Shown: positions 26,640 through 47,220, numbered from the stretch's first letter. The stretch is DNA of 64,000 bases from Heteronotia binoei (GCF_032191835.1 NW_026800229.1:310001-374000), one strand, 5' to 3'. Notes: a model not told the origin generated them from the sequence alone. Program-made: numbers and translations.

Positions 26640-27080
26640 ATGGTGAGGGGTCTGGAGACCAAGTCCTGTGAAGAAAGGTTGAAGGAGCTGGGCATGTTTA
26701 GCCTGGAGAGGAGGCGGCTGAGAGGTGATAGGATCACCATCTTCAAGTCCTTGAAGGGCTGTCATATAGAGGATGGGGTGGAATTGTTTTCTGTGGCCCC
26801 AGAAGATAGGACCAGAACCAATGGGTTGAAATTAAATCAAAAGTGTTTCCGACTCAATATTAGGAAGAACTTCCTCACCGTTAGAGCGATTCCTCAGTGG
26901 AACAGGCTTCCTTGGAAGGTGGTGGGCTCTCCTTCCTTGGAGGTTTTTAAACAGAGGCTGGATGGCCATTTGACAGTGATGAAGATCCTGTGAATTTGGG
27001 GTAGGTATTTGTGGGTTTCCTGCATTGTGCAGGGGGTTGGACTAGATGACCCTGGAGGTCTCTTCCAACTCTATGATATA
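26640..27080 (+). mobile_element. CR1 3' fragment (second CR1 family)
   Basis: Translation [19 protein letters not shown]...NIRKNFLTVRAIPQWNRLP. End CCAACTCTATGAT. Confidence 0.85.
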
Positions 27081-27697: not shown

Positions 27698-27891
27698 CAG
27701 TTTTCCCTCTCAGCTGAGTGAGCGTGAGCTGGCTCACAGATTTTTAGCCTCCAGCTCACACATTTGTGCCTTCGCTCAGGAAGGAGGGCCCCAGAGCACA
27801 CTCATGGATGCAGGAGCTCACAGCTCTAAGGCCAGGAGCTCACAAAGGAGAATTTTTGCTCACAAGACTCTGCAGCTTAGAGGGAACATTG
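27698..27891. mobile_element. hAT-type MITE
   Basis: TIR CAGTTTTCCCTCTCAGCTG / CAGCTTAGAGGGAACATTG. TSD GTGGTGAC/GTGATGAC. Confidence 0.75.
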
Positions 27892-27899
27892 GTGATGAC

Positions 27900-28785
27900 C
27901 AGGGGCATAGCTAGGGCTTTAGGGGCCTGGCTGGCTGCCTATGGGGGCTGGGGGCCTATGTGTGTGCACGCCGCCAGAAACAGGATATGATGTCACTTCC
28001 GATGATGTCACTTCCGCAAGATGGCCACCACTTGCGAGGGAGCCCTGCTGGAAACAGGAAGTGATGGAGGTGGAGGTGGAAAGAAAGCAACTTCAACTTT
28101 AAATGTGTTCTCCGAGCTGGCCGATGGGGGGGGGGGGGGCTTTAAGAGCCACGCAATGTGTGCGAAAGAGCCAACATATCATATATATGTTTTAAACACC
28201 TGCAACGATGAAGGTTCCAGACCAAAATTCCGGCAGACTTGCGCAATGGCAGATCTACCGGCTGGCTGCGCCGGCAGGGCCAGAGAGACCGGCTCCGCGG
28301 TCGGGAGGCACCGGCGCCACAGCCACCCCCTCCCCGGCTCCCGCTCTATGACCTCGGCGGCCGGCAGCAGCGCAGGCCCCTTGCGCGCCGTGTGGAGCGC
28401 AGCAGCACGCTCCCCGGGCTGCCTCGCCGGAGGCAAGGACCAGCTTGCCCTAGCAACTGGCGGCGCCTCCTTGTGGCGCGCAGGGCAGGGCAGGGAGGCC
28501 CTTGGGCTCGCAGGCGGGCGGAGAGAGCCCCCCTGTTGGAGCTGTGCAGCATGGCCCCAGCAGCCGCCCGCCTCGGCCCCGGCTGCCTCCGGCGCTAGGC
28601 AGCGGCGGCGCCCAGCTCCTCTCCTCGCCTATGATCGCCAGCATGAACGTGGCGCTCCAGGATCTCGGTAGCAACGTGAGTGGCGGCGGCGGGGTCGCCA
28701 GGCAGCCGGCTTCTGAGGGGCCCCTTGGCATTGCCAAGGGGCCCCCCAGACCTGGGGCGACCCGCCCCCCCTCCCTACACCACTG
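27900..28785. mobile_element. 886-bp non-autonomous hAT-type element with CpG-rich interior
   Basis: TIR CAGGGGCATAG / CTACACCACTG. Perfect TSD GTGATGAC (27892-27899, 28786-28793). Confidence 0.8.
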
Positions 28786-29829
28786 GTGATGACTCTGTGG
28801 GGTTTTCTAAGGCAAGAGAGGAGCAGAGGTGGTTTTCCATTGCCGTCTCTGCATAGCAACCCTGGACTTCCGCCTTGGTGGTCTCCCATCCAAGTCCTCA
28901 CCAGTGCCGACTTTGCTCAGCTTCCGAGAACTGCTGGGTTTGGGATCTCCAGGCCATGGGTCCTTTTCTAATATCACTTGGTTGAGCTTAAAAACACCTT
29001 GTACCTCTCAAACAGAAGTCTGTGAGAATTCATTTTATCCAAGCTATCCCTCCCCTTCTGAAATAGAGATCTCCATTGTCTGGGAAGAAGAACTCTCAAC
29101 ATGGTTCCAGTGTGGGTGAGGGGAAGAATGTCGGAGGGGTTTAGCTGTTTCCTGTCGGCTCGTAGACAAAGGTTGTTGTGGGATATTCAGAACCAGCCTC
29201 TTTGCTCTTCTCCTGCCCTTTCAAGCAGCCCATTTGGGGATGGAGGAGGCAGCACCCACAGGCTAGTCCGATCCCATTAAATTTGAATGATGCAGAATTG
29301 ACTGTTAAAAGCAGAAGTCATTCCATAGAAAAAGAGGTGCCAGAACTCATTAGCATAGCTCATTTGCATATGCCACACCCCCTGACATCATTGGAAGGTG
29401 CACTAAATTATATCAGCTCATCAGCATCTATCTTAAAATGCTTCTTGAATTAGAATGGTTATCATAAAACCTGACTCCCAGCCAGTGTTCCCTCCGAGCT
29501 GAGTTAGCGTGAGCTAGCTCACAGATTTTTAACTTCCAGTTCACACAATTTTGTCTTCAGGAAGAATGACCCCAGATCTCCTTTGCGGCCACAGTGGCAT
29601 GAGGAAGATTTCCATCTGTCTGCTTTAGATGTTTTGGTTATTTCCCCATTTTTTTGTGGGGGAAACTACTAGAAAGTTTGTCATACCTTAGAGTGCAGCC
29701 AAATCCTGCGATGTCCTCATGCTTTCCGTTGTCTGATCCACTTTTCATAAGAACAGATTGGGGATCCAAACCCCGTCACAGAAACACCATAATCGCAGCA
29801 CGTGTGATGCTCACAGCAGTTGTTATACA

Positions 29830-30303
29830 CAGTGGTGTCAAACTCATTTGTTATGAGGGCCGGATCTGACATAAATGAGACCTTGAGGGGCCGGGCCATG
29901 TCGGGTTGGGCCAAGCTATATGTGCACCTATTTAAGATTAGGTAGCAGAGATATAAACTTTATAAAGAACACACACAAACACAAATATATATATTTTTTA
30001 AAAATTTAAAATGTTAGCACTCATTGGTGTTAAAGATCTTTCTTTGTATTTCTGCCATGGGATCCAGGGAACTGGGCAAAGGAAACTGTGGCTCTTTCCT
30101 TCCTTCCACAGGGGACCAGGAAGGGGAGGAGCCTCAGCCAATGGAGAAAACAGAGGTTTTGCTCTGCAGCTCCTGTGTGATTGAGCAAGCCATGCAAAGC
30201 AAGCTGTGATGCAAAAGGAAGCAAGAGAGGGAGAAGGAAGCAGTTGACAACCAGTTGCTTGGGGGCCTGATTCAGCCCCCGGACTGCATGTTTGGCACCC
30301 CTG
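29830..30303. mobile_element. hAT-type MITE specific to copy A, ~85 bp upstream of the receptor 2 acceptor
   Basis: TIR CAGTGGTGTCAAAC / GTTTGGCACCCCTG. TSD GTTATACA / (G)TTATAGA. Empty site GTTATACAGGATC in B (~40693). Confidence 0.8.
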
Positions 30304-30386
30304 TTATAGAGGATCAAACCATCCGTCCCTACCCCCCCACACACCCCCTCAGCTCCAGGATTAACGGACACTTTCTGTATCTGCAG

Positions 30387-31355
30387 GTGGTAACTGGGAG
30401 AACGTCCCACTTCTCAACGCCACTTGAGAACCTCAGCTTTGTCTCTCCCACCTTCCTCTTGTCGGGCTTCCCAGGCCTGGAAGACAAAGGCGTCTGGGTA
30501 GCCATCCCTTTCTGCTCCCTGTATGCAGCCGCCATCTTGGGGAACTGCATGGTCGTCCTTGTGATCGTGATGGTCCCAAGCCTCCACAAACCCATGTACT
30601 TTTTCCTCTCCATGCTGGCGGTGACAGAACTGGGGGTGTCCATATCTACGTTCCCCACAGTGCTGAGTGTCTTCCTGTTGGATGCCAGAGAGATTGGGAT
30701 GGATGCCTGTCTCTTCCAGATGTTCTTCATCCACTCCTTTTCCATCATGGACTCAGGAGTCCTCTGGGCCATGGCCTTTGACCGCTTCGTAGCCATCTAC
30801 AACCCCCTGCAGTACACCACTGTCCTGACCAACTCCAGGATCGCCATGATAGGTTTGGGGATTGCTGTGAGGAGCATCGTCCTGATGGCCCCCATACCTA
30901 TTCTCCTCAGGAGGCTGCCATTTTGTAGACCTAACCTGCTAGCTCATCCCTACTGTTTGCACCCAAATTTAATCCGGCTTCCTTGTGCCGACATCACAGT
31001 GAACAGCAGATATGGTTTGTTTGTTGTACTCTCCACTTTTGGACTTGATTTCCTCTTTATTGTCCTCTCCTACATTCTGATAGCCAAGACGGTGCTGGGC
31101 CTGGCCTCCAAGGAAGGGCGTCTGAAGGCCCTCAACCCCTGCATCTCCCACATCTGTGCCGTGGTTGTGTACTACACACCCATGATCGGCGTCTCCATGG
31201 CACATCGTTTTGGCAAGCACGCGTCTCCCCTTCTGCACACCCTCATGGCCCATATCTACCTCCTGGTCCCCCCAGTCCTGAACCCCCTCATCTACAGCAT
31301 CAAGACCAGGGAGATCCGCCACGCCCTCCACCAGTTTTTCTTTCAGAAGTCCTAA
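30387..31355 (+). CDS. Class I olfactory receptor, OR51-like, receptor 2; paralogous ATG is ACG (30417), frame otherwise intact
   Basis: LHKPMYFFL, MAFDRFVAIYNPLQY, HPYCLHPN, SHICAV, HRFG, PPVLNPLIYSIKT. No stop or frameshift. The start given is the first base after the acceptor CTGCAG (30386). Could be a pseudogene if no upstream ATG is spliced in. Confidence 0.75.
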   Translation: MVTGRTSHFSTPLENLSFVSPTFLLSGFPGLEDKGVWVAIPFCSLYAAAILGNCMVVLVIVMVPSLHKPMYFFLSMLAVTELGVSISTFPTVLSVFLLDAREIGMDACLFQMFFIHSFSIMDSGVLWAMAFDRFVAIYNPLQYTTVLTNSRIAMIGLGIAVRSIVLMAPIPILLRRLPFCRPNLLAHPYCLHPNLIRLPCADITVNSRYGLFVVLSTFGLDFLFIVLSYILIAKTVLGLASKEGRLKALNPCISHICAVVVYYTPMIGVSMAHRFGKHASPLLHTLMAHIYLLVPPVLNPLIYSIKTREIRHALHQFFFQKS

Positions 31356-31549
31356 TTCAGAATAGTTCAATGCAGTACTTAAAAAATATATAATTTAACA
31401 GAGAGAAGACATGACTTAGAGTGCTTAAGACAAAAAGGAATTGTGGAAGGCTTCAAGAGGATCTCTTCGAACTGGGGGAATGGGCATTAAACCCCCTCCC
31501 CCACAAAAAAACCCTGAAGTTAAATCTGAAGGCAGAACAAAGCTGTGGC

Positions 31550-34500
31550 CTGACCCAAGGCCATTTCAGCAGCTGCAAGTGGAGGAGGAAGGAATCAAAC
31601 ACGGTTCTCCCAGATAAGAGAGCTCTGGCTGACCCAAGGCCATTCCAGCAGCTGCAAGTGGAGGAGGAGGGAATCAGACTCGGTTCTCCCAGATAAGAGA
31701 GCTATGGCTGACCCAAGGCCATTCCAGCAGCTCCAAGTGGAGGAGTGGGGAATCAAACCTAGTTCTCCCAGATAAGAGAGTTCTGGCTGACCCAAGGCCA
31801 TTCCAGCAGCTCCAAGTGGAGGATTTTCCCGAGGGGCCTTGGGGAAGGGGCTTTAGCAGGGGCGGGTGGGGGGGAGCTGGCAGGGACAACCAAGCACAAA
31901 GACTGCAGTGGTGGGAGGCCAGGAGGGCAGATGGAGGCAGGAAGAAGAAGAAGATGATGACAACTGCAGAATTATACCCCGGCCTTCTCTTTGAATCAGA
32001 GTCTCAGAGTGGCTTACAATCTCCTTTATCTCCTTCCCCCACAACAGACAACTCCAGTGATAGCTCTGGCTGGCTCAAGGCCATTCCAGCAGCTGCAAGT
32101 GGAAGAGGGGGGGAATCAAACCCGGTTCTCGCAGATAAGAGAGCTATGGCTGACCCAAGGCCATTCCAGCAGGTACAAGTGGAGGTGTGGGAACCAAACC
32201 TGAGTCTCCCAGATACGAGAGCTCTGCCTGACCCAAGGCCATTTCAGCAGCTGCAAGTGGAGGAGGAAGGAATCAAACACGGTTCTCCCAGATAAGAGAG
32301 CTATGGCTGACCCAAGGCCATTCCAGCAGGTGAAAGTGGAGGAGGGGGGAATCAAACCCGGTTCTCCCAGATAAGAGAGCTCTGGCTGACCCAAGGGCAT
32401 TCCAGCAGCTCCAAGTGGAGGAGTGGGGAATCAAACCTAGTTCTCCCAGATAAGAGAGTTCTGGCTGACCCAAGGCCATTCCAGCAGCTGCAAGTTGAGG
32501 AGTGGGGAATCAAACCCGGTTCTCCCAGATAAGAGTCTACACACTTAACTACTGCGCCAAATTGGCTCTCACACCAAATTGGCCCTTTCAAGGACAATTC
32601 TTGCAAGACCTAGGGCTGACCCAAGGCCATTCCAGCAGGTGCAAGTGGAGGAGTGGAGAATCAAACCCGGTTCTCCGAGATAAGAAAGCTCTGGCTGACC
32701 CAAGGCCATTCCAGCAGGTGCAAGTGGAGGAGTGGAGAATTAAACCGGGTTCTCCCACATAAGAGAGCTCTGGCTGATCCAAGGCCATCCCAGCAGGTGC
32801 AAGTGAAGGAGTGGGGAATCAAACCCGATTCTCCCAGATAAGAGAGCTCTGGCTGACCCAAGGCCATTCCAGCAGCTCCAAGTGGAGGAGTGCAGAATTA
32901 AACCCGGTTCTCCCACATAAGAGAGCTCCGGCTGATCCAAAGCCATTCCAGCAGCACCAAGTGGATGAGTGGAGAATTAAACCCGGTTCTCCCAGATAAG
33001 AGAGCTCTGGCTGACCCAAGGCCATTCCAGCAGCTGCAAGTGGAGGAGTGGGAGAATCAAACCCGGTTCTCCCAAATAAGAGAGCTCTGGCTGACCCAAG
33101 GCCATTCCAGCAGCTGCAAGTGGAGGAGTGGGGAATCCATCCCGGTTCTCCCAGATAAGAGAGCTCTGGCTGACCCAAGGCCATTCCAGCAGGTGCAAGT
33201 GGAGGAGTGGGGAATCAAACCCGGTTCTCCCAGATAAGAGAGCTCTGGCTGACCCAAGGCCATTCCAGTAGCTGCAAGTGGAGGAGTGGCGAATCAAACC
33301 CGGTTCTCCCAGATAAGATAGCTCTGACTGACCCAAGGCCATTCCAGCAGCTGCAAGTGGTGGAGTGGGGAATCAAACCCGGTTCTCCCAGATAAGTGAG
33401 CTCTGGGTGACCCAAGGCCATCCCAGCAGTTGCAAGTGAAAGAGTGGGGAATCAAACCCGATTCTCCCAGATAAGAGAGCTCTGGCTGACCCAAGGCCAT
33501 CCTAGCAGCTGCAAGTGGAGGAGTGGAGAATTAAACCCGGTTCTCCCAGATAAGAGAGCTCTGGCTGACCCAAGGCCATTCCAGGAGCTCAAAGCGGAGG
33601 AGTGGAGAATTAAACCCGGTTCTCCCAGATAAGAGAGCTCTGGCTGACCCAAGGCCATTCCAGCAGGTGCAAGTGGAGGAGTGGGGAATCCAACCCGGTT
33701 CTCCCAGATAAGAGAGCTCTGGCTGCCCCAAGGCCATTCCATCAGCTGCAAATGGGGGAGTGGGGAATCAGACCCGGTTCTACCAGATAAGAGAGCTCAG
33801 GCTGACCCAAGGCCATTCCAGCAGTTGCAAGTGGAGGAGCGGGGAATCAAATCCAGTTTCCCCAGATAAGAGAGCTTTGGCTGCCCCAAGGCCATTCCAG
33901 CAGCTGCAAGTGGAGGAGTGGGGAATCAAACCCGGTTCTCCGAGAGAAGAGAGCTCTGGCTGACCAAGGCCATTCCAGCAGTTGCAAGTGGAGGAGCGGG
34001 GAATCCATCCCGGTTCTCCCAGATAAGAGACCTCTGGCTGACCCAAAGCCATTCCAGCAGGTGCAAGTGGAGGAGTGGGGAATCAAACCTGGTTCTCCCA
34101 GATATTAGAGCTCTGGCTGACCCAATGCCATTCCAGCAGCTGCAAGTGGAGGAGTGGGGAATCAAACCCGGTTCTCCCAGATAAGTGAGCTCTGGGTGAC
34201 CCAAGGCCATTCCAGCAGCTGCAAGTGGAGGAGTGGGGAATCAAACCCGGTTCCCCCAGATAAGAGAGCTCTGGCTGACCCAAGCCCATTCCAGGAGCTG
34301 CAAGTGGAGGAGTGGGGAATCAAACCCGAGTCTCCCAGATAAGAGCGCTCTGGCTGTCCCAAGGCCATTCCAGCAGCTGCAAGTGGAGGAGTGGGAAACC
34401 AAACCTGAGTCTCCCAGATAAGAGAGCTCTGGCTGACCCAAGGTCATTCCAGCAGGTGCAAGTGGAGGAGTGGGGAATCAAACCTGGTTCTCCCAGATAA

Positions 34501-35165
34501 GAGAGCTCTGGCTGACCCAAGGCCATTCCAGCAGCTTCAAGTGGAGGAGTGGGGAATCCATCCCGGTTCTCCCAGATAAGAGAGCTCTGGCTTACCAAAG
34601 GCCATTCCAGCAGGTGCAAGTGGAGGAGTGGGGAATCAAACCTGGTTCTCCCAGATAAGAGAGCTGGGGTGACCCAAGGCCATTCCAGCAGCTGCAAGTG
34701 GAGGAGTGGGGAATCAAACCCAGTTCTCCGAGATAAGGGAGCTCTGACTGACCCAAGGCCATTCCATCAGCTGCAAGTGGTGGAGTGGGGAATCAAACCC
34801 GGTTCTCCCAGATAAGTGAGCTCTGGGTGACCCAAGACCATATCAGCAGGTGCAAGTGAAGGAGTGGGGAATCAAACCCGATTCTCCCAGATAAGAGAGC
34901 TCTGGCTGACCCAAGGCCATTCCAGCAGCTCCAAGTGGAGGAGTGGAGAATTAAATCCAGTTCTCCCAGATAAGAGAGCTCTGGCTGACCCAAGGCCATC
35001 CTAGCAGCTGCAAGTGGAGAAGTGGAGAATTAAACCTGGTTCTCCCAGATAAGAGAGCTCTGGCTGACCCAAGGCCATTCCAGCAGGTGCAAGTGGAGGA
35101 GTGGGATATCAGACCCAGTTCTTCCAGACAAGAGTCCGCACACTTAACCACTGCACCAAACTGGC
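31550..35165 (-). repeat. 79-bp Squam3-derived array (roughly 40 units, two SINE heads)
   Basis: Reverse complement of the 79-bp unit. SINE heads at ~32530-32580 and ~35125-35165. Non-array interruption at ~31820-32080. Confidence 0.95.
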
Positions 35166-35556
35166 ACTGGATAGGTAGAAATGTCAACCTATGGTGTGGC
35201 TCCTGTGAAAAAGGCAAAGTCTATGCTGGTCACAGTTAGAACAGGAACAGACTGACCCTTCCCAGCACCCCCCCCCCCCCGCCCCAGCCTTCCCTCCTAG
35301 GTCTTCTTGGTCTCCAGGCTCCACCCTCCTGCCCCAGACTGAATTCTTGATCTTCATCCCCTGCTTTCTTTTCCTCCCCACAGAATAACCCCCGTGGAGA
35401 AACGCCTTCTATCCTACTGAACACTTCTTCATCTGTGTCTCAGGATCCTGAGTTACTGTTAAGGATCTCTCTCCTCCATCTCCTCCCTCCCACCGAGATT
35501 TATGCTCTTGGCATGGCAGACCTGGGCATGCCAGACCTGACACAGGGACGGATGGG

Positions 35557-35852
35557 CAGGGCCGGTGCGTGGGATTAGGCACGGTAGGTGACTGCCTAGA
35601 GCACTACCCCACCTGGGGGTGCTCCTGACTTCTCTTGCACCTCCCCCGAGTGGAAGGTGCCGTTCAGCCGCTGCGCTCTGTGAAGCCTCTGAAGAGCGCG
35701 GTGTTTTAGCGGCGCCCAGCCAATTTCGGGTTGAAAGCAGCTGAGCGGCGCCTTCCCATAAAGGCGTGAAAAAAATTATGAAAGGGAGATGTGGGGGGGG
35801 GGGGCGGCTCAGGAGTCTGCTGTTAGTGGCAGAACCTCTAGTGCCAGGACTG
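35557..35852. mobile_element. hAT-type element specific to copy B
   Basis: CAGGGCCGG...CCAGGACTG ends. TSD CGGATGGG/CTGATGGG. Empty site CTGACGGG in A (~25437). Confidence 0.7.
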
Positions 35853-36857
35853 CTGATGGGGCCGCACATTTCAGAAGCCCCAGCAGACAATGTGCTCCTT
35901 TGCCTTCTTCCATCTTCCTCCCCGCCCCCCCCAGTGCCCCCCAGGATCTGGAGCACTGAGCCACAACTCTGGGGCCTGCATGCTTCCTTATGGCCAGACG
36001 CAAACATGGCTCAGCTGGGAGAAGGGCAAGAGAACCACACATCTTACGTCATACACACCATGGTGCGTTGTGGTGGTTTCCATAACCTCACTCCTTGCCA
36101 CACTTCAAATTAGCTGAGCACCCTGGCTCTCTTGTCAGGGGCAAGCGCTCCCCCAGAGAACAGGTGTCTTTTGGCCCCAGGTGTCTCTCCCCTTGATGGC
36201 CACCCCCCCCCCCCGCTGTCATCAGCTCAGCCAGCTAATTGGCCTGTGGCAGGTTCCTGGTTGGTCCCCAAGGGCCCTCTGGCTCCGGGCACAAATGCCG
36301 CCTCCTGCAGGGGGAGGCCTGGCCTTGTCTCTCCCCCCCCCCATCACTGAGCAGGAAGGACGAGAGATGTCGGCAGTGGTGAGTGAGGAGGGCAGACAGC
36401 AGGCAGCACCAGCCTTTGGGCACTGGGCCTCACAGGAGTCCTGGGTGGGAAGGAACCCGTGCGGGGGGGGGGATTGGGAGGGACCCTGCGGCAGACCCAA
36501 AGTTGCCTGAGGTGGGAAGGGGGGGCGGGGCTCATTCTTTGCCTTGGGAAAGACGCCTTTCCGCAGCACTCTCTCTCTCTGTCTCCTCTGTTATTTGCAA
36601 AATACTTGGTTTTGCATGCAAGAACACAATAAAACATTCCGGTTGCATTGGTGTTTTTTTTTAAATGATCTTATTTTCTGGTTCCCACTGTTGCTGAGTG
36701 TTTGGAAAATTGCTCAGCTCATTATTATTATTTTCTTGCTGGCTTCAGTCTTATGGTGACAAATACTTCTCTAGATCCATCTTGATATCATTTTTTTTAA
36801 GTTGGAAGGCGCCTCAGAAGCAGATCTGCAGAAAGTTCAGCTGTAAATATATATACG

Positions 36858-37640
36858 GTGAGGGGTCTGGAGAAAAAGTCCTATGGAGAAAGGTTGAAGG
36901 AGCTGGGGATGTTTAGCCTGGAGAGGAGGTGGCTGAGAGGTGATAGGATCACCATCTTCAAGTCCTTGAAGGGATGTCCTAGAGAGGATGGGGTGGAATT
37001 GTTTTCTGTGGACCCAGAAGGTAGGACTAGAACTAGTGGGTTGAAATTAAATCAAAAGAGTTTCCGGCTCAACATTTGGAAGAACTTCCTGACTGTAAGA
37101 GCAATTCCTCAGTGTAACAGGCTTCCTCTGTTATTTGCAAAAGAGAGCCAGTTTGGTGTAGTGGGAGAGCCAGTTTGGTGTAGTGGTTAAGTGTGCGGAC
37201 TCTTATCTGGGAGAACCGGGTTTGATTCCCCACTCCTCCACTTGCACCTGCTAGCATGGCCTTGGGTCAGCCATAGCTGTGGCAGAAGTTGTCCTTGAAA
37301 GGGCAGCTGCTGTGAGAGCCCTCTCAGCCCCATCCACCTCACAGGGTGTCTGTTGTGGGGGAGGAAGGTAAAGGAGATTGTGAGCCGCTCTGAGACTCTT
37401 TGGAGTGGAGGGCGGGATATAAATCCAATATCTTCTTCTTCTTCTTCTTCTTCTTCCTCCTTGGGAGGTGGTGGGCTCTCCTTTCTTGGAGGTTTTTAAG
37501 CAGAGGCTGGAGGGCCATCTGACAGCAAGGCGGATCCTGTGAATTTAGGGGGGGAGGGCAGTATTTGTGAATTTCCCTCATTGTGCAGGGGGTTGGACTA
37601 GATGACCCTGGAGATCTCTTCCAACTCTAGGATTCTATGA
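36858..37640 (+). mobile_element. CR1 3' fragment (paralog of 26640) interrupted by a SINE
   Basis: Same CR1 translation as 26640-27080, split at ~37127. Confidence 0.8.
37143..37456 (+). mobile_element. Full-length Squam3-like SINE (parent structure of the 79-bp arrays), B-specific
   Basis: A box TGGTGTAGTGG, B-box variant GGTTTGATTCC, 22-bp head duplication, (CTT)n tail. Confidence 0.85.
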
Positions 37641-38969
37641 TATATTTAAATAGAACTTTTACACTGAAAGGCAGCTGTCATAAAATTTGGTGCAGTGTTT
37701 TATAAAGAGACCTAAGAGTGATAGAAGCAGGGGTCGTTCTGTAGAAAAACAGGTGGTGGAGCTCATTAGCTTAACTCATTATCATATGCTCCCTGCACCT
37801 GCCAAAAGCAACCCAATGCAAGAGAGGAGAGTCTCGGGTGAGCGAGGCCTGCTTGCGCTAGAGATCCAGCCGGCCTAAGCAGGCCTCGCTCTCCTGGGGC
37901 TCTCCTTGGCCACCCCCCTCCCCGCAGTCAAAAGGCCAACAAGCCACCCAGCACCCAAAATCACATAAGAAGTGGAGAAAGAGTGGCCTGGGCTTCTCTA
38001 GGGGTACATGAGGGCTGCTGGGGGTGTGGCAGAGCCCCTGGTGGCTGGCTGGCTGCCCGCTCTCCTAATCCAGGGATTGTTATGCAGCTGCACCTCCTAT
38101 TCAATGGACAAGGTAGGTAGGTGGGGAGGAGGGGAGGGCATCAGAAAGGTTCAGGAGCTGTGCTCCTGTGAGCTCCTGATGAATCTGAGGCCTGGATAGA
38201 AAGAAGTCTTTCTTCCCATTTCCTTTTTGTGCTGCCAAGTCACAGCTGACTTGTGGTGGTGACCAGTTTTCCCTCTCAGCTGAGTGAGCGTGAGCTGGCT
38301 CACAGATTTTTAGCCTCCAGCTCACACATTTGTGTCTTCGCTCAGGAAGGAGGGCCCCAGAGCACACTCATGGATGCAGGAGCTCACAGCTCTAAGGCCA
38401 GGAGCTCACAAAGGAGAATTTTTGCTCACAAGACTCTGCAGGTTGTTGTGGGATATTCAGAACCAGCCTCTTTGCTCTTCTGCTGCCCTTTCAAGCAGTC
38501 CATTTGGGGATGGAGGAGACATCACCAACAGGATAGTCCGATCCCATTGAGGGTTAAGGAGAGCCCTTTGAATTCCTCAGTCATGATCATGATTGTCTGT
38601 TAAAAGCAGGAGTCGTTTAAGAGAAAAAGAGGTGCCAGAGCTCATTAACACAACCCACTGCAAATGCCCCACATACCCCTGACATCACCTGAAGGTGGAC
38701 TAAATTCTATCAGCTCAGCATCTACTTCCAAATGCTTCTTGAACTAGAATTGTCATAACAAAACCTTCCTCCCGTCATACTTTTAAAATCACTTCCTCCT
38801 CGGTGGCCACAGTGGCAGGGTGAAGGTTTCCATCTGTCTGCTTTAGATGTTTTAGTTATTTCCCCATTTTTTGTGGGGAAAAACATTAGAAAGTTTGTCA
38901 GATCTTAGAGTGCAGCAAGATTATGACTATTATTATTTATTACATTTATGAATCGCATCATTCCGGCCA

Positions 38970-39165
38970 ATGGGGAGGGACGGTGGCTCAGTGGTAGAGC
39001 ATCTGCTTGGGAAGCAGAAGGTCCCAGTTCAATCCCCGGCATCTGCAAAAAACGGTCCAGGCAAATAGGTGTGAAAAACCTCAGCTTGAGAACCTGGCGA
39101 GAAGACAATACTGACTTTGATGGACCAAGGGTCTGATTCAGTATAAGGCAGTTTCATATGTTCAT
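38970..39165 (+). mobile_element. tRNA-derived SINE with CR1-like tail
   Basis: TGGCTCAGTGG A box, GTTCAATCC B box, tail GGTCTGATTCAGTATAAGGCAG. Relatives at 47255, 53925, 62705 and 62950. Confidence 0.7.
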
Positions 39166-39384
39166 ATAAGAACATAAGAACATAAGAGAAGCCATGTTGG
39201 ATCAGGCCAACGGCCCATCAAGTCCAACACTCTGTGTCACACAGTGGCAAAAAATTTTATATACACACATACACTGTGGCTAATAGCCACTGATGGACCC
39301 GTGCTCCATATTTTTATCTAAACCCTTCTTGAAGGTGGCTATACTTCTTCAATATATATGTTCAATCCTGGGCTCTAGGCGATG

Positions 39385-39418
<34 letters not shown>

Positions 39419-39529
39419 TTTTATTTGTGGTGGCGGCCATAAGCATAGACACCTTCAAGAGGGGTTTATATAAAAATATGGAGCAGAGGTCCATCAGTGG
39501 CTGTTAGCCACAGTGTGTGTGTGTGTGTT

Positions 39530-39895
39530 TTGGCCACTGTGTGACACAGAGTGTTGGACTGGATGGGTCATTGGCCATATCCAACATGGCTTCTCTTATG
39601 TTCTTATGTGACACAGAGTGTTGGACTGGAGGGGCCATTGGCCATATCCAACATGGCTTCTCTTATGTGACACAGAGCGTTGGAATGGAGGGGCCGTTGG
39701 CCTGATCCAACATGGCTTCTCGTATGTTCTTATGTGACACAGAGTGTTGGACTGGAGGGGCCATTGGCCTGATCCAAGAGGGCTTCTCTTATGTTCTTAT
39801 GTGACACAGAGTGTTGGACTGGAGGGGCCACTGGCCTGATCCAGCAGGCTTCTCTTATGTTCTTATGTGGCACAGAGTGTTGGACTGTAGGGGCC
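39530..39895 (+). repeat. 67-bp CR1 3'-end tandem array (~5 units)
   Basis: Repeats of GTGACACAGAGTGTTGGACTGGAGGGGCCATTGGCCTGATCCAACATGGCTTCTCTTATGTTCTTAT. Confidence 0.9.
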
Positions 39896-39960
39896 TGTGG
39901 AGTGTTGGACTGTAGAGAGAAGACATGACTGAGAGTTCTTAAGACAAAAACGAATTGTGG

Positions 39961-40495
39961 AAGAACATAAGAGAAGCCCTGTTGGATCAGGCCAATGGTC
40001 CCTCCAGTCCAACACTCTGTGTCACATAATAACATAAGAGAATCCCTGTTGGATCAGGCCAATGGCCCCTCCAGTCCAACACTCTGTGTCACAGAAGAAC
40101 ATAAGAGAAGTCCTGTTGGATCAGGCCAGTGGCCCATCCACTCCAACATCCTGTGTCACATAAGAACATAAGAGAAGCCCAGTTGGATCAGGCCAATGGT
40201 CCCTCCAGTCCAACCCTCTGTGTCACATAAGAACATAAGAGAAGCCCTGTTGGATCAGGCCAGTGGCCCCTCCAGTCCAACACTCTGTGTCACATAAGAA
40301 CATAAGAGAAGCCCTGTTGGATCAAGCCAATGGCCCCTCCAGTCCAACACTCTGTGTCACATAAGAACATAAGAGAAGACCTGTTGGATCAAGCCAACGG
40401 CCCCTCCAGTCCAACACTCTGTGTCACATAAGAACATAAGAGAAGCCCTATTGGATCAGGCCAATGGTCCCTCCAGTCCAACACTCTGTGTCACA
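39961..40495 (-). repeat. 67-bp CR1 3'-end tandem array (~8 units), inverted relative to 39530-39895
   Basis: Unit CATAAGAACATAAGAGAAGCCCTGTTGGATCAGGCCAGTGGCCCCTCCAGTCCAACACTCTGTGTCA. Period 67 (40226 to 40293). Confidence 0.92.
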
Positions 40496-40816
40496 CAAGG
40501 GCTAAAAAAGAACGGAGGTTCATAAGTAGGGCTAGAAGCCCTTCCACTTTCCCCACCCCCAAGCACCAAGAGGTTAAGGTTCAAGGCCTCAAAGGCCAAA
40601 ACCAAAATCCTGTGATGTCCTCATGCTTTCATTAATCTGATCCACTTCATAGAAACACCATCATTGCAGCAGGTGTGAGGCTCACAACGGTTGTTATACA
40701 GGATCAAATAATCCGTCCCAACCCCTCCCACCCCCCACCCCCTCAGCTCCAGGATTAACGGGCACTTTCTGTATCTGTATCCGCAGGTGGTAACTGGGAG
40801 AAAGTCTGACTTCTCA

Positions 40817-41740
40817 ATGCCACTTGAGAACCACAGCTTTATCTTGTCAGGCTTCCCAGGCCTGGAAGACAAAGGCGTCTGGGTAGCCATCCCTTTCTGC
40901 TCCCTGTATGCAGCTGCCATCTTGGGGAACTGCATGGTTGTCCTTGTGATCGTGATGGTCCCAAGCCTCCACAAACCCATGTACTTTTTCCTCTCCATGC
41001 TGGCGGTGACGGAACTGGGGGTGTCCATATCTACGTTCCCCACAGTGCTGAGTGTCTTCCTGTTGGATGCCAGAGAGATTGGGATGGATGCCTGCCTGGC
41101 CCAGATGTTCTTCATCCACTCCTTTTCCGTCATGGACTCAGGAGTCCTCTGGGCCATGGCCTTTGACCGCTTCGTAGCCATCTACACCCCCCTGCAGTAT
41201 GCCACCGTCCTGACCAACTCCAGGATCGCCATGATAGGTTTGGGGATTGCTGTGAGGAGCATCGTCCTGGTACCCCCCTTACCCATTCTCCTCAGGAGGC
41301 TGCCATTTTGTAGACCTAACCTGCTAGCTCATCCCTACTGTTTGCACCCAAATTTAATCCGGCTTCCTTGTGCCGACATCACAGTGAACAGCAGATATGG
41401 TTTGTTGGTCGTACTCTTCACTTTTGGACTTGATTTCCTCTTTATTGTCCTCTCCTACGTTCTGATAGCCAAGACGGTGCTGGGCCTGGCCTCCAAGGAA
41501 GGGCGTCTGAAGGCCCTCAACCCCTGCATCTCCCACATCTGTGCCGTGGTTGTGTATTACACACCCTTGATCGGCTTATCCATTGCACATCGTTTTGGCA
41601 AGCACGCTTCTCCTCTTCTGCACACCCTCATGGCCCATATCTACCTCCTGGTCCCCCCAGTCCTGAACCCCCTCATCTACAGCATCAAGACCAGGGAGAT
41701 CCGCCACGCCCTCCACCAGTTTTTCTTTCAGAAGTTCTAA
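40817..41740 (+). CDS. Class I olfactory receptor, OR51-like (307 aa from ATG 40817), receptor 3, duplicate of receptor 2
   Basis: NHS glycosylation site and the same OR motifs as receptor 2. In-frame acceptor CCGCAG at 40786. Confidence 0.93.
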   Translation: MPLENHSFILSGFPGLEDKGVWVAIPFCSLYAAAILGNCMVVLVIVMVPSLHKPMYFFLSMLAVTELGVSISTFPTVLSVFLLDAREIGMDACLAQMFFIHSFSVMDSGVLWAMAFDRFVAIYTPLQYATVLTNSRIAMIGLGIAVRSIVLVPPLPILLRRLPFCRPNLLAHPYCLHPNLIRLPCADITVNSRYGLLVVLFTFGLDFLFIVLSYVLIAKTVLGLASKEGRLKALNPCISHICAVVVYYTPLIGLSIAHRFGKHASPLLHTLMAHIYLLVPPVLNPLIYSIKTREIRHALHQFFFQKF

Positions 41741-42039
41741 TTCGGAATAGTTCAATGCAGTACTTTAAAAAAATATAATTTAACAGAGAGAAGACATGAC
41801 TTAGAGTGCTTAAGACAAAAAGGAATTGTGGAAGGCTTCAAGGATCCCTTCGAACTGGGGGAATGGGCATTAAACCCCCTCCCCCCCCCCCAAAAAAAAA
41901 AAACTGAAGTTAAATCTGAAGGCAGAACAAAGTGCACAGAAATCAGGGGATAACCCAAAGCAGAAGGGGGCCAGAAGTGATGGACAAAAACTAGGTGAGA
42001 AAGCCCCAAGAAAGGGACCTTTGGGTGGTAGTGGGTAGA

Positions 42040-42311
42040 AGAAGAAAAAGAAGACTGCAGATTTATACCCTGCCTTCTCTCTGACTCAGAGCAGCTCACA
42101 ATCTCCTTTACCTTCTTCCCCCACAACAGACACCCTGTGAGGTGGGTGGGGCTGAGAGAGCTCTGACAGAAGCTGCCCTTTCAAGGACAACTCCTAAGAG
42201 AGCTATGGCTGACCCAAGGCCATTCCAGCAGCTGCAAGTTGAGGAGGGGGGAAACCAACCCGGTTCTCCCAGATAAGAGTCCTCACACTTAACCACCACA
42301 CCAAACTGGCA
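42040..42311 (-). mobile_element. Single unexpanded Squam3-like SINE flanked by 60-bp direct repeats
   Basis: One copy of the 79-bp region. Repeats at 41979-42038 and 42321-42380 with about 6 mismatches. Confidence 0.8.
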
Positions 42312-42849
42312 TCCAGAACCGATGGACAAAGTCTATGTGAGAAAGCTCCAGGAAAGGGTCCTTTGGGTGGTAGTGGGTAGCTAGGCAGAGATGTCTCCTC
42401 AAGGTGTAACTCCTGTGGAAAAGGCAAAATCTATGCTGGCCATAATTGGAACAGGAATACAGACCAAAACTGCCACTGCTTTCCTGCTCTTTTGCAAATC
42501 TGTGATGTCACCACAGTGAGAACAGATGGGAGAGGCTTCTCGGTTCTGTGCAAAGTGCTGGGTGAAATCATCCCAGCCGGCCACCAAGCGGTCCACCTCC
42601 TCCTGCAGCCCGGAGCCCAGCAGGCCTCTTGACCACCCAGAAAGGCTCCTCCGGTCAACATGGGGCTGATGCAACGGAGGCAGGAGACGGCTGTGGTTCC
42701 TTTGCCGTCATCATCATCATCACCACTACCACAGAGAACTTTGCCTGGTCCTGCGGGTTGTGGCCAACATCTGCCTCTGCTGATGCTCCAGCCCCCTCCT
42801 GGTCTTTCCACTGACCAAAGCCCTTCCGGAATCCAAGGGGCTTTTTTGT

Positions 42850-44735
42850 TGTTGTTCAGACGCACAGTTGAGTCCGACTCTTTGCGGCCCCCTGGACCAA
42901 GTCCCGCCAGGCCCTCCTGTCTTCCACCATCCTCCGAAGTCTGCTCAAATTCGTGTTTGTGACATCAGTAATGCTGTCCAGCCATCTCCTCTTTTGCTGT
43001 CCCCTTCTTCTTTTGCCTTCTGTCTTTCCCAGCATCAGGATCTTCTCCAGGGAGTGCTCCCTTCTCATTGGGTGGCCAAAGTACTGGAGCTTCAGCTTCA
43101 GCATCTGACCTTCCAGGGAACAGTCTGGGTTGATTTCCCTTAGGACTGACTGACTGGATCTTCTTGCAGTCCAAGGGACTCTGAAGAGTCTTCTCCAGGG
43201 AGTGCTCCCTTCTCATTGGGTGGCCAAGAATTTGAGCTTCAGCTTCAGCATCCGACCTTCCAGGGAACAGTCTGGGTTGATTTCCCTTAGGACTGACCGA
43301 TAGGATCTTCTTGCAGTCCAAGGGACTCTTGAGTCTTCTCCAGTGAGGGCTCCCTTCTCCTTTGGTGGCCAAAGTATTTGAGCTTCAGCTTCAGCATCTG
43401 ACCTTCCAGGGAACAGTCTAGGTTGATTTTCCTTAGGACTGACTGATTGGATCTTCTTGCAGTCCAAGGGACTCTAGTTGTGTTATTGTTCAGTCACACA
43501 GTGGAGTCTGACTCTATGTGACCCCCTGGACCAAGTCCCGCCAGGCCCTCCTGTCTTCCACCATCCTCCGAAGTCTGCTCAAATTCGTGTTTGTTACATC
43601 AGTAATGCTGTCCAGCCATCTCCTCTTTTGCTGTCCCCTTCTTCTTTTGCCTTCTGTCTTTCCCAGCATCAGGATCTTCTCCAGTGAGGGCTTCCTTCTC
43701 ATTGGGTGGCCAAAGTATTGGAGCTTCAGCTTCAGCATCTGACCTTCTGGGGAACAGTCTGGGCTGATTTCCCTTAGGACTGACTGATTGGATCTTCTTG
43801 CAGTCCAAGGGACTCTTGAGTCTTCTCCAGTGAGGGCTCCCTTCTCCTTTGGTGGCCAAAGTATTTGAGCTTCAGCGTCAGCATCTGACCTTCCAGGGAA
43901 CAGTCTAGGTTGATTTTCCTTAGGACTGACTGACTGGATCTTCTTGCAGTCCAAGGGACTCTCAAGAGTCTTCTCCAGGGAGTGCTCCCTTCTCATTGGG
44001 TGGCTAAAGTATTTGAGCTTCAGCTTCAGCATCTGACCTTCCAGGGAACAGTCTGGGTTGATTTCCCTTAGGACTGACCGATAGGATCTTCTTGCAGTCC
44101 AAGGGACTCTTGAGTCTTCTCCAGTGAGGGCTCCCTTCTCCTTTGGTGGCCAAAGTATTTGAGCTTCAGCGTCAGCATCTGACCTTCCAGGGAACAGTCT
44201 AGGTTGATTTTCCTTAGGACTGACTGACTGGATCTTCTTGCAGTCCAAGCGACTCTCAAGAGTCTTCTCCAGGGAGTGCTCCTTTCTCCTTTGGTGGCCA
44301 AAGTATTGGAGCTTCAGCTTCAGCATCTGACCTTCCAGGGAACAGTCTGGGCTGATTTCCCTTAGGACTGACTGACTGGATCTTCTTACAGTCCAAGGGG
44401 CTCTCAAGAGTCTTCTCCAGGGAGTGCTCCCTTCTCATTGGGTGGCCAAAGTATTTGAGCTTCAGCTTCAGCATCTGACCTTCCAGGAACAGTCTGGGCT
44501 GATTTCCCTTAGGACTGACTGATTTGGGTCTTCTTGCAGTCCAAGGGACTCTCAAGAGTCTTCTCCAGGGAGTGCTCCCTTCTCATTGGGTGGCCAAAGT
44601 ATTGGAGCTTCAGCTTCAGCATCTGACCTTCCAGGGAACAGGGTTGATTTCCCTTCGACCGACTGATTTGATCTCCTTGCAGTCCAAGGGGCTCTCGAGA
44701 GTCTTCTCCAGCACCACATCTCAAAAGCATCGGCT
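42850..44735 (-). repeat. Two tandem BovB (RTE) 3' ends with ~146-bp sub-arrays (3 and 7 units)
   Basis: Translation LKLKLQYFGHPMRREHSLEKILMLGKTEGKRRRGQQKRRWLD...DRRAWRDLV is a BovB ORF C-terminus. CAGTCCAAG recurs about every 146-148 bp. Confidence 0.9.
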
Positions 44736-45610: not shown

Positions 45611-46139
45611 GTCTGCAGGGACTTTGTAGTTGAGAAAAGAGATGATGGGGGGGGGGGGGAGGGACACATGATTCAGGTTAGTCAAATTATGCACAGGGTG
45701 AAGAGAGCTGACAAAGAGAGCTTTGGCTCCCTCTCCCCAAAGACTAGAACTTGAGGGCATCCAGTGAAGCCAACGGGCAGGAGTTTCAGGGTGGAGAAAT
45801 GGCTCCAGGCCCCCTCCCCAAAGAGGCCCCACACGTGACCCTCAGCCCTTCAATCACTGCAGGTCAGCCTCCACAGCTCTGCCACCCTGGCTGGTGCCTC
45901 CTCCTGGCTCTTGAGCATCCCTTCAGCTTCTGGAGATCTGTTTTCAAAGAGGCCTGCCCAGCTGGGCTCACACAGGCCTCTTCGCCAGACCCCTCCCCCT
46001 CCCACTGAGCCCCCTTCATGCTGAAGTTGCCCTCCCCCCATACGTATTTCAGAAAATGTGTTCATCAGTAGTCATGCCCCTCCCTGTCCCCCCCCTCCAA
46101 ATCTGGAACAGTTGTGGGGCCTGCATACGTATTCATGAA

Positions 46140-47220
46140 CATTAGAACATAAGAGAAGCCCTGTTGAATTAGCCCAATGGCCCATCCAGTCCAACACTCA
46201 GTGTCACACAGTGGCCAAAAAAACTCAGGAAGTCCTTCAGTGGGGCCAGGACACTAGAAGTCCTCCCACTCTACCCCCCCGCCCCAGCACCAAGAATACA
46301 GAGCGTCACTGCCCCAGACATAAGAACATAAGAGAAGCCCTGTTGGATCAGGCCAATGGCCCATCCAGTCCAACACAGTGTGTTACACAGTGGCCAAAAA
46401 ACCCAGGTGTCATCCGGAGGTCCACCAGTGGGGCCAGGATACTAGAAGCCCTCCCACTGTGCCCCAAAGCACCAAGAATACAGAGCGTCACTGCCCCAGA
46501 CATAAGAACATAAGAGAAGCCCTGTTGGATCAGGCCAATGGCCCATCCAGTCCAACACTGTGTGTTACACAGTGGCCAAAAAACCCAGGTGTCATCCGGA
46601 GGTCCACCAGTGGGGCCAGGATACTAGAAGCCCTCCCACTGTGCCCCAAAGCACCAAGAAGACAGAGCATCACTGTTCCAGACATAAGAACATAAGAGAA
46701 GCCATGTCGGATCAGACCAACTGCCCAACATTCTATGTCACACTGGGGCAAAAAAACCCAAATGCCATCAGGAGGTCCATCAGTGGAACCAGGACACTAG
46801 AAGCCCTCCCACTGTTGCCCCCCGAAGCACCAAGAATACAGAGCATCACTGCCCCAGACAGAGAGTTCCATCAATACACTGTGGCTAACAGCCACTGATG
46901 GACCTCTGCTCCAGATGCTTATCCAATCCCCTCTTGAAGCTGGCTATGCTTGCAGCTGCCACCACCTCCTGTGGCAGTGAATTCCACGTGTTAATCCCCC
47001 TTTGGGTGAAGAAGGACTTCCTCTTATTCATTCTAACCCGACTGCTCAGCAATTTCATTGAGTGCCCACGAGTTCTTGTATTGTGAGAAAGGGAGAAAAG
47101 GACTTCTTTCTCTACTTTCTCCATCCCATGCATTATCTTGTTAACCTCAATCATGTCACCCCTCAGTTGACATTTCTCCAAGCTAAAGAGCCCAAGAATT
47201 TTAACCTGTCTTCATAGGGA
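46140..47220 (-). mobile_element. CR1 fragment with the 3' terminal ~180 bp repeated four times
   Basis: Tail starts at ~46140, 46318, 46499 and 46682. CR1 ORF2 translation at 46885-47181. Confidence 0.85.

What the first reader, a model, noticed from the sequence alone, without database searches (positions are those of the whole stretch)
31550..42311. Before-and-after snapshot: one SINE in copy B corresponds to a 3.6-kb satellite in copy A
Seen: downstream of receptor 3 there is a single minus-strand SINE (42040-42311). At the equivalent position downstream of receptor 2 there is an array of roughly 40 units (31550-35165). Both heads end CAAACTGGCA rather than the usual CAAACTGGCTC, and flanks match on both sides (…GAAGGCAGAACAAAG; TAGG.AGA.ATGTC…CTCCTGTG). 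Copy A has lost the SINE tail and short flanks. Inference: the array grew in situ from this SINE after the duplication, which bounds the rate of satellite birth.
Basis: partly seen in the sequence, partly recalled or inferred. Interest (0 to 1): 0.7.

Follow-up and report, generated by a model that had tools for sequence, protein, structure and literature searches.

The report
Compound SINE minisatellite beside receptor duplicate
Next to one of two duplicated gecko smell-receptor genes lies a 3.6-kb block of 79-base repeats made from a jumping element, and the other copy has a single such element at almost the same spot; but the block is a patchwork of at least two elements of an already published repeat class, and it cannot be dated from its flanks.

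Summary
The sequence facts largely hold. Copy B of a tandemly duplicated OR51-like unit carries one minus-strand Squam3B SINE (42039-42311). Copy A carries about 42 units of a 79-bp piece of that SINE (31541-35166), between matching flanks.

The "one SINE became one array" reading is too simple:
- **A is compound.** It has 3.6 units, 120 bp of foreign DNA, a SINE tail (so the tail is not lost), 6 units, a second and canonical SINE head, a body fragment, 32 units, and a terminal head.
- **The junctions differ.** B has a 68-bp target-site duplication that A lacks.
- **The units carry no B signature.** Their consensus equals that of two other arrays in the window, and the unit tree is a star.
- **The flank clock fails.** Flank divergence is mosaic at 0-11% per 150 bp, which suggests gene conversion. 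The 88-bp right flank differs by 18%, and array units sit 2.7 times further from their consensus than the flanks allow.

A shared ancestral insertion remains plausible, because both fit the same nick site in a LINE fragment. It is unproven, and no rate bound follows.

The class, SINE-derived satellites of squamates, was published in 2023. This scan has already met the same 79-bp arrays elsewhere in this genome.

The parts
30255..31355 (+). Receptor 2 (OR51I2-like class I olfactory receptor ORF), copy A of the duplicated unit
   Evidence: ORF list. 96.3% substitution identity to receptor 3. Homologues are named OR51I2-like in geckos.
31356..31540 (+). 3' flank of copy A. It ends ...GAAGGCAGAACAAAG. 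The last part already reads as a decayed CR1-like LINE ORF2.
   Evidence: Aligned to 41741-41930 with 7 differences in 183 sites. The LINE reading comes from the translation plus my own inference.
31541..31823 (-). Segment 1: 3.6 units of the 79-bp repeat, abutting the flank directly. It is a 283-bp copy of 32219-32501.
   Evidence: TRF. Ungapped identity 94%, or 11 substitutions in 282 sites, to 32219-32501.
31824..31943 (.). 120 bp of G-rich DNA of unknown origin, with no SINE or LINE similarity
   Evidence: No match elsewhere in the window. Local alignment to B's LINE piece scores no better than shuffled sequence (214 of 500 shuffles reach it).
31944..32580 (-). SINE no. 2, a complete Squam3B-type element: (CTT)n tail and LINE-derived region with an internal body deletion (31944-32061), 6 units (32062-32534), a canonical head ...GGCTCT (32535-32566), and a 14-nt partial 5' head duplication (32567-32580)
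   Evidence: Sequence. BLAST to the B SINE. SINE alignment.
32581..35166 (-). SINE no. 3, 3'-truncated: body fragment covering SINE positions about 112-137 (32581-32610), 32 units (32611-35134), and a terminal head ending ...CAAACTGGCA (35135-35166)
   Evidence: Units are 10.8% apart pairwise and 5.9% from their own consensus. Multi-unit block duplications occur, for example 33320 vs 34740 at 95.4%.
35167..35252 (+). Right flank of copy A: the LINE ORF2 fragment paralogous to 42374-42464. It ends in the CAGAC microhomology (35248-35252) that joins unit 1 to unit 2 of the tandem duplication.
   Evidence: Alignment. 15 differences in 82 sites. Junction sequences at 20916-20920, 35248-35252 and 42460-42464.
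40787..41740 (+). Receptor 3 (OR51I2-like ORF), copy B
41931..42038 (+). LINE ORF2 fragment present only in B. It includes the left copy of the 68-bp direct repeat (41971-42038).
   Evidence: This stretch has no counterpart in A.
42039..42311 (-). Single Squam3B-type SINE of copy B, with tail, LINE-derived region, body, one 79-bp unit and head. CTCTTA occurs at SINE positions 33 and 112, exactly 79 bp apart.
   Evidence: It is 9.4% from the window's SINE consensus.
42313..42380 (+). Right copy of the 68-bp direct repeat, the presumed target-site duplication of B's SINE. The LINE fragment continues after it.
   Evidence: 88.2% identical to 41971-42038 (8 differences in 68).

Best explanation
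The block in copy A is a compound locus of the published class 'SINE-derived satellite' (sSat3). Its 79-bp unit is positions 33-111 of a gecko Squam3B-type SINE: the 3' part of the tRNA-like head with the B-box region, plus the start of the CORE body.

Steps shown:
1. A and B are the two units of a microhomology-mediated tandem duplication.
2. A's block is built from at least two SINE copies, each carrying its own run of units, plus a 283-bp secondary copy of six-unit-run sequence and 120 bp of filler.
3. The long run grew partly by multi-unit block duplication and is old and static.
4. The A/B flanks are a mosaic of near-identical and 6-11% diverged patches.

Steps inferred:
- One Squam3B copy inserted into a CR1-like LINE fragment at a nick between LINE positions x+68 and x+69, at about the time of the original, older duplication.
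- In copy A its 79-bp segment, bracketed by CTCT(T/C) microhomology, was first duplicated by slippage or unequal exchange. It then expanded by unequal sister-chromatid exchange.
- A second array-prone Squam3B copy later joined the locus.
- A later rearrangement removed about 100 bp of LINE and the 3' half of the first SINE.
- Gene conversion between the two receptor units then homogenised the flanks up to the point where homology is broken by the block. The flanks therefore look about 4% diverged while the right edge (18%) and the array keep the older divergence.

The locus is most likely neutral.
For: - Class and family: the SINE consensus from the window matches the published Squam3B consensus in the head, CORE and LINE-derived regions and the (CTT)n tail. 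sSat3 is described in PMC10702118.
- Compound anatomy.
- Duplication junction.
- Same site: A's head abuts LINE sequence equivalent to 42374/42381, and B's tail abuts 42038, the same LINE coordinate to within 0-7 bp. [quoted passage not shown]
- Microhomology: CTCTTA occurs 79 bp apart in B.
- Block growth. An A2 unit groups with an A3 unit at 97/83 support.
- Mosaic flanks and the excess divergence of the right edge, the direct repeats and the units.
- B's direct repeats (8 differences in 68) are more diverged than the pooled flanks (P = 0.0095), so B's SINE predates the event the flanks record.
Against: - If one insertion is ancestral, A must have lost exactly the right-hand 68-bp repeat copy, flush with the SINE 5' end, or B must have gained it. 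No standard mechanism does either.
- A's consensus unit carries G (CCAGAGCT) like the two other arrays, whereas B and most single SINEs carry T.
- None of B's five private unit changes is shared by A's consensus. The body fragment next to A's long run differs from B at about 8 of 26 sites.
- The tail that resembles B's tail subtype (TCTGCAGT type) belongs to SINE no. 2, whose left flank is not the LINE.
- Gene conversion is inferred from the mosaic divergence alone.
- The assembly of the block could not be checked with reads.
Confidence: 0.5

Rival explanations
1. Independent insertions. After the old duplication, copy B received a Squam3B SINE with an unusual 68-bp target-site duplication. 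Copy A separately received one or more Squam3B copies, possibly already multi-unit, at nearly the same LINE site, and these then expanded. The pair would then not be a before/after pair.
For: - Neither junction of A equals a junction of B, and A lacks both repeat copies.
- There are no shared private substitutions. The G/T site groups A with the other arrays rather than with B.
- B's repeat divergence (11.8%) is nominally lower than the right-flank divergence (18.3%).
- Squam3B was still inserting after the flanks last coalesced: the site at 37122-37456 is filled while 26906 is empty.
- SINE arrays are dense, with three loci in 64 kb.
- Copy A demonstrably received at least one extra SINE, no. 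2 with its canonical head.
Against: - Two insertions in the same orientation within 0-7 bp of the same nick site are improbable by chance. With about 1 SINE per 4 kb, I estimate roughly 1% or less.
- The difference between the repeat divergence and the right-flank divergence is not significant (Fisher P = 0.36).
Confidence: 0.28
2. One SINE predated a recent (about 4%) duplication. Copy A's array grew wholly in situ from it afterwards, so the flanks date the birth of the satellite.
For: Matching flanks, the same orientation, and a shared GGCA head end. B's monomer has a 6-bp CTCTTA repeat exactly 79 bp apart, a plausible seed for the first duplication.
Against: - The block is compound, with a second canonical head, a tail and filler.
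- Units are 2.7 times more diverged from their consensus than the per-lineage flank divergence. The youngest block duplications are already 4.6% diverged.
- B's unit has 5 differences in 79 sites from the array consensus, against about 1.7 expected (P = 0.03).
- The right flank is 18% diverged (P = 2.5e-6).
- The flank clock is over-dispersed.
Confidence: 0.07
3. The array came first. The array already existed when the units last shared an ancestor, and copy B collapsed back to a single unit by intra-array recombination. B would then be the 'after' state and A the 'before' state.
For: - Unit divergence exceeds flank divergence.
- B's unit is as far from the array consensus (6.3%) as a typical A unit is (5.9%).
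- In B the unit is followed by AGCT-CTCTTA, identical over 10 nt to the inter-unit junction of the arrays.
Against: - It does not explain the 18% right flank without also invoking an old duplication plus conversion.
- B keeps a complete body, tail and both 68-bp repeats, while A lost them.
- CTCTTA in B can arise by two substitutions at a decayed CpG site.
Confidence: 0.1
4. Assembly artefact. The internal head, tail and filler, or the unit number, result from mis-joining of reads from several Squam3B arrays.
For: Tandem arrays are error-prone in assemblies, and PMC10702118 warns of this. The same unit occurs at many loci in this genome (scan notes).
Against: Units are individually diverged (86% matches), which gives reads unique anchors. 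Internal duplicates are 4-6% diverged, not identical. The window has no N runs.
Confidence: 0.05

Closest known systems
Squam3-derived satellites (sSat3) of squamates, Vassetzky, Kosushkin & Ryskov 2023, Mob DNA 14:21 (PMC10702118)
   Same: Tandem head-to-tail repeats of an internal piece of a Squam3 SINE, often with a longer terminal unit running to a SINE terminus. The paper reports insertions of unknown origin, unit sub-variants and locus-to-locus homogeneity, and finds the class abundant and diverse in geckos. It also describes rare loci with both SINE termini and repeats in between, like the array at 17386-18260 here.
   Different: Heteronotia binoei was not among the four geckos analysed. 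The gecko units described there are 126-151 nt, whereas this unit is 79 nt. Here the comparison is between paralogues inside one genome, not orthologues.
Snake sSat3 unit (67 nt, positions 42-108 of Squam3C, including box B) (PMC10702118)
   Same: The unit covers the 3' part of the head with box B plus the start of the body, almost the same segment as positions 33-111 here.
   Different: A different subfamily (Squam3C vs Squam3B), a different unit length and a different lineage. Origin is presumably independent.
Orthologous sSat3 locus variation in Crotalus pyrrhus / C. viridis (PMC10702118, section 'Variation of orthologous sSat3 loci')
   Same: Matched flanks with different unit numbers, with some pairs differing by 10 or more units and carrying insertions of unknown origin.
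   Different: That is a between-species comparison. No case of 1 against about 40 units, and no dating, is reported there.
Gene conversion between tandem olfactory-receptor paralogues
   Same: A mosaic of near-identical and diverged patches between adjacent paralogues, ending where homology is interrupted.
   Different: Here it is inferred only from over-dispersed divergence. No donor/acceptor polarity or third sequence is available.

Membership tests
Squam3 SINE, subfamily B/B3 (PMC7983390) | tRNA-derived head beginning GAGAGCCAGTKTGGTGTAGTGGTTAAG | tested here: met
   The window SINE consensus and copies at 37165, 3010 and 7822 start (GAG)AGCCAGTTTGGTGTAGTGGTTAAG. The published Squam3B consensus was read.
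Squam3 SINE, subfamily B/B3 (PMC7983390) | CORE-type body with ...CTCTCAGCCCC / ACYCACCTCACAGRGTG..., and an L2-like 3' region ending ...GCGGGATAT.AAATCCAA... with a (CTT)n tail | tested here: met
   The window consensus has CTCTCAGCCCCACCCACCTCACAGGGTG ... GGCGGGATATAAATCCAATATCTTCTTCTT. (CTT)n is the Squam3B tail, and gecko B3 copies are 267-271 nt. Copies here are about 270 nt.
Squam3 SINE, subfamily B/B3 (PMC7983390) | [quoted passage not shown] | tested here: inconclusive
   One clean filled/empty pair shows a 6-bp CTTCCT duplication plus 15 extra nt. B has a 68-bp repeat. A's head junction is blunt or near-blunt. That is only three junction sets.
SINE-derived satellite sSat3 (PMC10702118) | At least 4 tandem head-to-tail units that correspond to a portion of the SINE | tested here: met
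   There are 3.6 + 6 + 32 units of SINE positions 33-111.
SINE-derived satellite sSat3 (PMC10702118) | A terminal unit extended to a SINE terminus | tested here: met
   The head runs to the 5' terminus at 35135-35166 and at 32535-32566. The tail runs to the 3' terminus at 31944-32061.
SINE-derived satellite sSat3 (PMC10702118) | Units more alike within and between loci than SINE copies are to each other | tested here: inconclusive
   The consensus units of three loci are identical. Arrays 1 and 2 are homogeneous (4.4% and 7.4% pairwise), but A3 units (10.8%) are as diverged as single SINE copies (10.1%).
SINE-derived satellite sSat3 (PMC10702118) | Preference for subtelomeric regions | not testable with these tools
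   The chromosomal position of the window is not given.
   B has a 68-bp repeat on both sides. A has neither copy, and A's left junction is a mid-LINE breakpoint joined to a unit.
   The tree is a star. B's nearest unit is in array 1. A's consensus shares 0 of B's 5 private states. The test has low power at 79 columns.
   Units lie 5.9% from their consensus against 2.2% per lineage in the flanks. The youngest block duplications are 4.6% diverged. The flank clock is over-dispersed and the right flank is 18% diverged.

The most novel reading that the evidence does not exclude
The terminal SINE of copy A and the single SINE of copy B descend from one insertion. The pair would then show the full path from a single Squam3B copy to a 3.6-kb compound minisatellite within the lifetime of one gene duplication. 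It would also show that the array attracted a second SINE, shed its target-site duplication, and acted as a barrier to gene conversion between the receptor paralogues.
Probability: 0.4. Interest if true: 0.45.

Novelty: new member of a known kind. Interest (0 to 1): 0.27.

Why it matters
If the pair were a clean before/after case, it would give polarity and a time frame for the birth of a satellite from a SINE. The 2023 description of SINE-derived satellites leaves that question open. As it stands, the locus is one more, rather old and rearranged, example of that class in a gecko species not yet surveyed.

Its main lesson is one of method. In tandem receptor clusters the flanks are homogenised in patches, so flank divergence cannot date what lies beside them.

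The window also holds a clean filled/empty pair for a single Squam3B insertion (37122-37456 vs 26906). That pair is better material for studying how this SINE integrates.

Tried and rejected
- **Reads.** Neither the assembly nor array-length polymorphism could be checked.
- **Unit phylogeny.** IQ-TREE on 77 units of 79 columns gave a star tree that cannot place B.
- **The 120-bp filler (31824-31943).** It has no match in the window and no significant similarity to B's LINE piece, so I rejected the idea that it is the diverged counterpart of 41931-42038.
- **A third paralogue of the 3' flank or LINE site as an internal outgroup.** A sensitive BLAST found none, only a 50-bp piece at 39914-39963.
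- **The shared GGCA head end as a synapomorphy.** Rejected as weak: it is a single nucleotide, and about as many coincidences are expected by chance.
- **The shared tail subtype (TCTGCAGT) of B and A.** It is real, but it sits on SINE no. 2, whose flank is not the LINE, so it does not establish homology.
- **Rfam scan of 31-43 kb.** It returned only one tRNA-like hit at 38983-39040, outside the finding.

Full report
**What is there**

The window is a class I (OR51I2-like) olfactory-receptor cluster of Bynoe's gecko, Heteronotia binoei. The species comes from an earlier scan note, and it fits the protein search, where another paralogue is named from H. binoei. Receptor ORFs lie at 15544-16659, 30255-31355 (receptor 2), 40787-41740 (receptor 3) and 52653-53708.

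**The duplication**

Self-comparison shows a tandem duplication with collinear blocks from 20938/35282 to 31542/41932. I located its junction. Unit 1 begins just after CAGAC at 20916-20920. Copy B's LINE fragment reads ...ACAGAC at 42460-42464 and then continues. In copy A the same LINE fragment stops at CAGAC (35248-35252) and runs straight into the start of unit 2. The duplication is therefore microhomology-mediated. The SINE site lies only about 85 bp from the end of the duplicated unit. This also proves that 35167-35252 and 42374-42464 are true paralogues.

**The observation**

Copy B has one minus-strand SINE at 42039-42311. Copy A has 79-bp units from 31541 to 35134, followed by a SINE head ending at 35166. 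The left flanks match to the base up to ...CAAAG, and the right flanks match over about 85 bp. Both heads read ...CTGGCA.

The rest of the description needs correction:
- The A block is compound. It consists of:
  - 3.6 units (31541-31823);
  - 120 bp of unrelated G-rich DNA (31824-31943);
  - a SINE tail and LINE-derived region with an internal body deletion (31944-32061);
  - 6 units (32062-32534);
  - a canonical SINE head ...GGCTCT plus a 14-nt partial head duplication (32535-32580);
  - a body fragment of SINE positions about 112-137 (32581-32610);
  - 32 units (32611-35134);
  - the terminal head (35135-35166).
- Read in the SINE's own orientation, this is a 3'-truncated array-bearing SINE (no. 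3) followed by a complete array-bearing SINE (no. 2), then filler, then a 283-bp copy of part of no. 2's units. That copy is 94% identical ungapped, with 11 substitutions in 282 sites.
- The tail is therefore not lost, and there are two heads.
- In B the SINE is bracketed by a 68-bp direct repeat of LINE sequence (41971-42038 and 42313-42380, 8 differences). A has neither copy.

**What kind of thing it is**

The SINE consensus built from the window's copies matches the published Squam3B consensus in the head, the CORE body, the L2-like 3' region and the (CTT)n tail (supplement of PMC7983390). Its length of about 270 nt fits the gecko B3 subfamily.

Tandem repeats made from internal pieces of Squam3 are the 'SINE-derived satellites' (sSat3) of Vassetzky et al. 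2023 (PMC10702118). That paper found them abundant and structurally diverse in geckos. It noted insertions of unknown origin, locus-specific sub-variants and rare loci with both SINE termini.

The same 79-bp unit forms two further arrays inside plus-strand SINEs in this window, at 3010-5145 (22 units) and 17386-18260 (9 units). Earlier notes of this scan report the same unit elsewhere in this genome. I treated those notes as leads only. The class is known, and this is a new species and a new unit length.

**Test 1: phylogeny of the units**

I cut all units in phase and compared them.
- The consensus unit of A's long run is identical to the consensus of the arrays at 3.2 kb and 17.4 kb.
- B's unit has five private differences, and none of them is present in A's consensus.
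- B is on average 11.7% from A3 units, but 8.3% and 8.6% from the two other arrays.
- At the CCA[G/T]AGCT site, the arrays at all three loci carry G. B and three of five single copies carry T.
- The maximum-likelihood tree is a star. B falls in a weakly defined set with units of every array, and one A3 unit is identical to a unit of array 1.

With only 79 columns, however, the test has little power, so I treat it as uninformative rather than decisive.

**Test 2: dating**

Substitution divergence between A and B is as follows:

| Region | Divergence |
|---|---|
| Receptor coding sequence | 3.7% |
| 3' flank | 3.8% |
| Upstream blocks | 3.0-7.5% |
| Start of the duplicated unit | 6.6-6.9% |
| Right LINE piece | 18.3% (15 of 82) |

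- In 150-bp windows the counts run from 0 to 16. The dispersion index is 3.0 (P = 2e-6).
- The right piece exceeds the pooled 4.4% rate with P = 2.5e-6. It also exceeds the most diverged block, with P = 0.001.
- I read this mosaic as patchy gene conversion over an older duplication. The conversion stops where the block interrupts homology. This is an inference.
- A3 units are 10.8% apart pairwise and 5.9% from their own consensus, which is 2.7 times the per-lineage flank divergence.
- The most similar 3-unit blocks inside the run are 95.4% identical. The array is therefore old and static, and it stopped growing at or before the time the flanks record.
- B's unit differs from the array consensus at 5 of 79 sites, where a recent split predicts about 1.7 (P = 0.03).
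- B's 68-bp repeats are more diverged than the flanks (P = 0.0095). B's SINE is therefore older than the flank coalescence.

The simple model of a recent duplication followed by array growth is thus contradicted. Any version that survives needs an old duplication, and then the flanks give no date.

**Test 3: junctions**

- In B the plus-strand primer end for reverse transcription is LINE position x+68 (42038, directly followed by the tail). The head is followed by the repeat copy x..x+68.
- In A the head is followed by LINE sequence equivalent to 42374-42381 onward, that is x+62 to x+69 depending on how a 4-nt gap is placed.
- A's head junction together with B's tail junction would therefore make an almost blunt insertion at one and the same LINE position. 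Blunt insertion is the usual outcome for Squam3.
- This is the strongest evidence for a common insertion, or else for a strikingly reused nick site.
- A single event cannot have two different 5' junctions. Either A lost the right repeat copy flush with the SINE end, or B gained it, or there were two insertions.
- A's left side gives no help. The LINE is broken at ...CAAAG and joined to a unit, and the tail that is present has non-LINE DNA on its left.
- The shared GGCA is one nucleotide. The shared tail subtype of B and SINE no. 2 (TCTGCAGT type, against TCCAATAT in five other tails) is suggestive, but it sits on the element whose flank is wrong.

**How it most likely works**

- The unit is bracketed in the SINE by short direct repeats, CTCT(T/C). 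In B it is CTCTTA at positions 33 and 112, exactly 79 bp apart.
- This offers a seed for a first slippage or unequal-exchange duplication, and it explains why the same period recurs at many loci.
- Growth then proceeds by unequal exchange of one to many units. Lag 79 dominates, and there is a block copy at a lag of 1420 bp. Unit variants are shared between the 6-unit and 32-unit runs.
- Further SINE insertion and rearrangement produced the present patchwork.
- Nothing suggests a function. The block lies 185 bp downstream of the receptor's stop codon, inside a decayed LINE.

**Verdict**

The two loci are paralogous positions carrying the same SINE family, and a common ancestral insertion is plausible. 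My estimates are about 55% for common origin and about 28% for independent insertions.

The array is compound, old and not traceable to B's monomer, and the flanks cannot date it. No bound on the rate of satellite birth follows. The class is already published.

**Limits**

No outgroup locus, no other individual and no read-level check of the assembly was available.

Noticed in passing
window 37122-37456 vs 26900-26912: A clean filled/empty pair for one Squam3B insertion. Unit 2 has a full SINE with a 22-nt duplicated 5' end (37143-37186), 15 extra nucleotides at the 5' junction and a 6-bp CTTCCT target-site duplication. Unit 1 has the intact empty site. The insertion is younger than the last A/B flank coalescence.
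   Followed up: partly
window 20916-20920, 35248-35252, 42460-42464: The junction of the receptor-unit tandem duplication has a 5-bp CAGAC microhomology. The duplicated unit ends inside a CR1-like LINE ORF2 fragment.
   Followed up: yes
window 20922-31540 vs 35255-41930: A/B divergence is a mosaic, with 0-2 against 9-16 differences per 150 bp (dispersion 3.0, P = 2e-6). This suggests patchy gene conversion between the two receptor units.
   Followed up: partly
window 3181, 4966, 50850: A second recurrent internal SINE junction, body position about 180 joined to position about 48 (...CACAGGGT|YTGATTCC...), occurs at three places. This points to a 133-bp repeat variant of the same SINE that is either copied around or formed repeatedly at GGGT microhomology.
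   Followed up: no
window 39914-39963: A 50-bp copy (94%) of the receptor 3' flank (31400-31449 / 41785-41834) sits between two oppositely oriented arrays of a 67-bp unit (39540-39895 and 39961-40499). The same 67-bp unit forms arrays at 54337-55597 and within 46139-46860.
   Followed up: no
window 51159-52592: A 46-copy array of a 31-bp C/T-rich unit lies immediately upstream of the receptor ORF at 52653-53708 and creates long spurious ORFs in three frames.
   Followed up: no
window 43041-44711: Arrays of a 146-148-bp unit (higher-order 294 bp). Their minus strand reads as the repeated C-terminal part of a LINE ORF2 (ORF 43514-44407), so this is a LINE-coding-segment-derived tandem repeat.
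   Followed up: no
window 38983-39040: A tRNA-like hit (Rfam RF00005, 38.5 bits, plus strand), probably the head of a different SINE family. The Squam3B heads themselves do not reach the tRNA gathering score.
   Followed up: no
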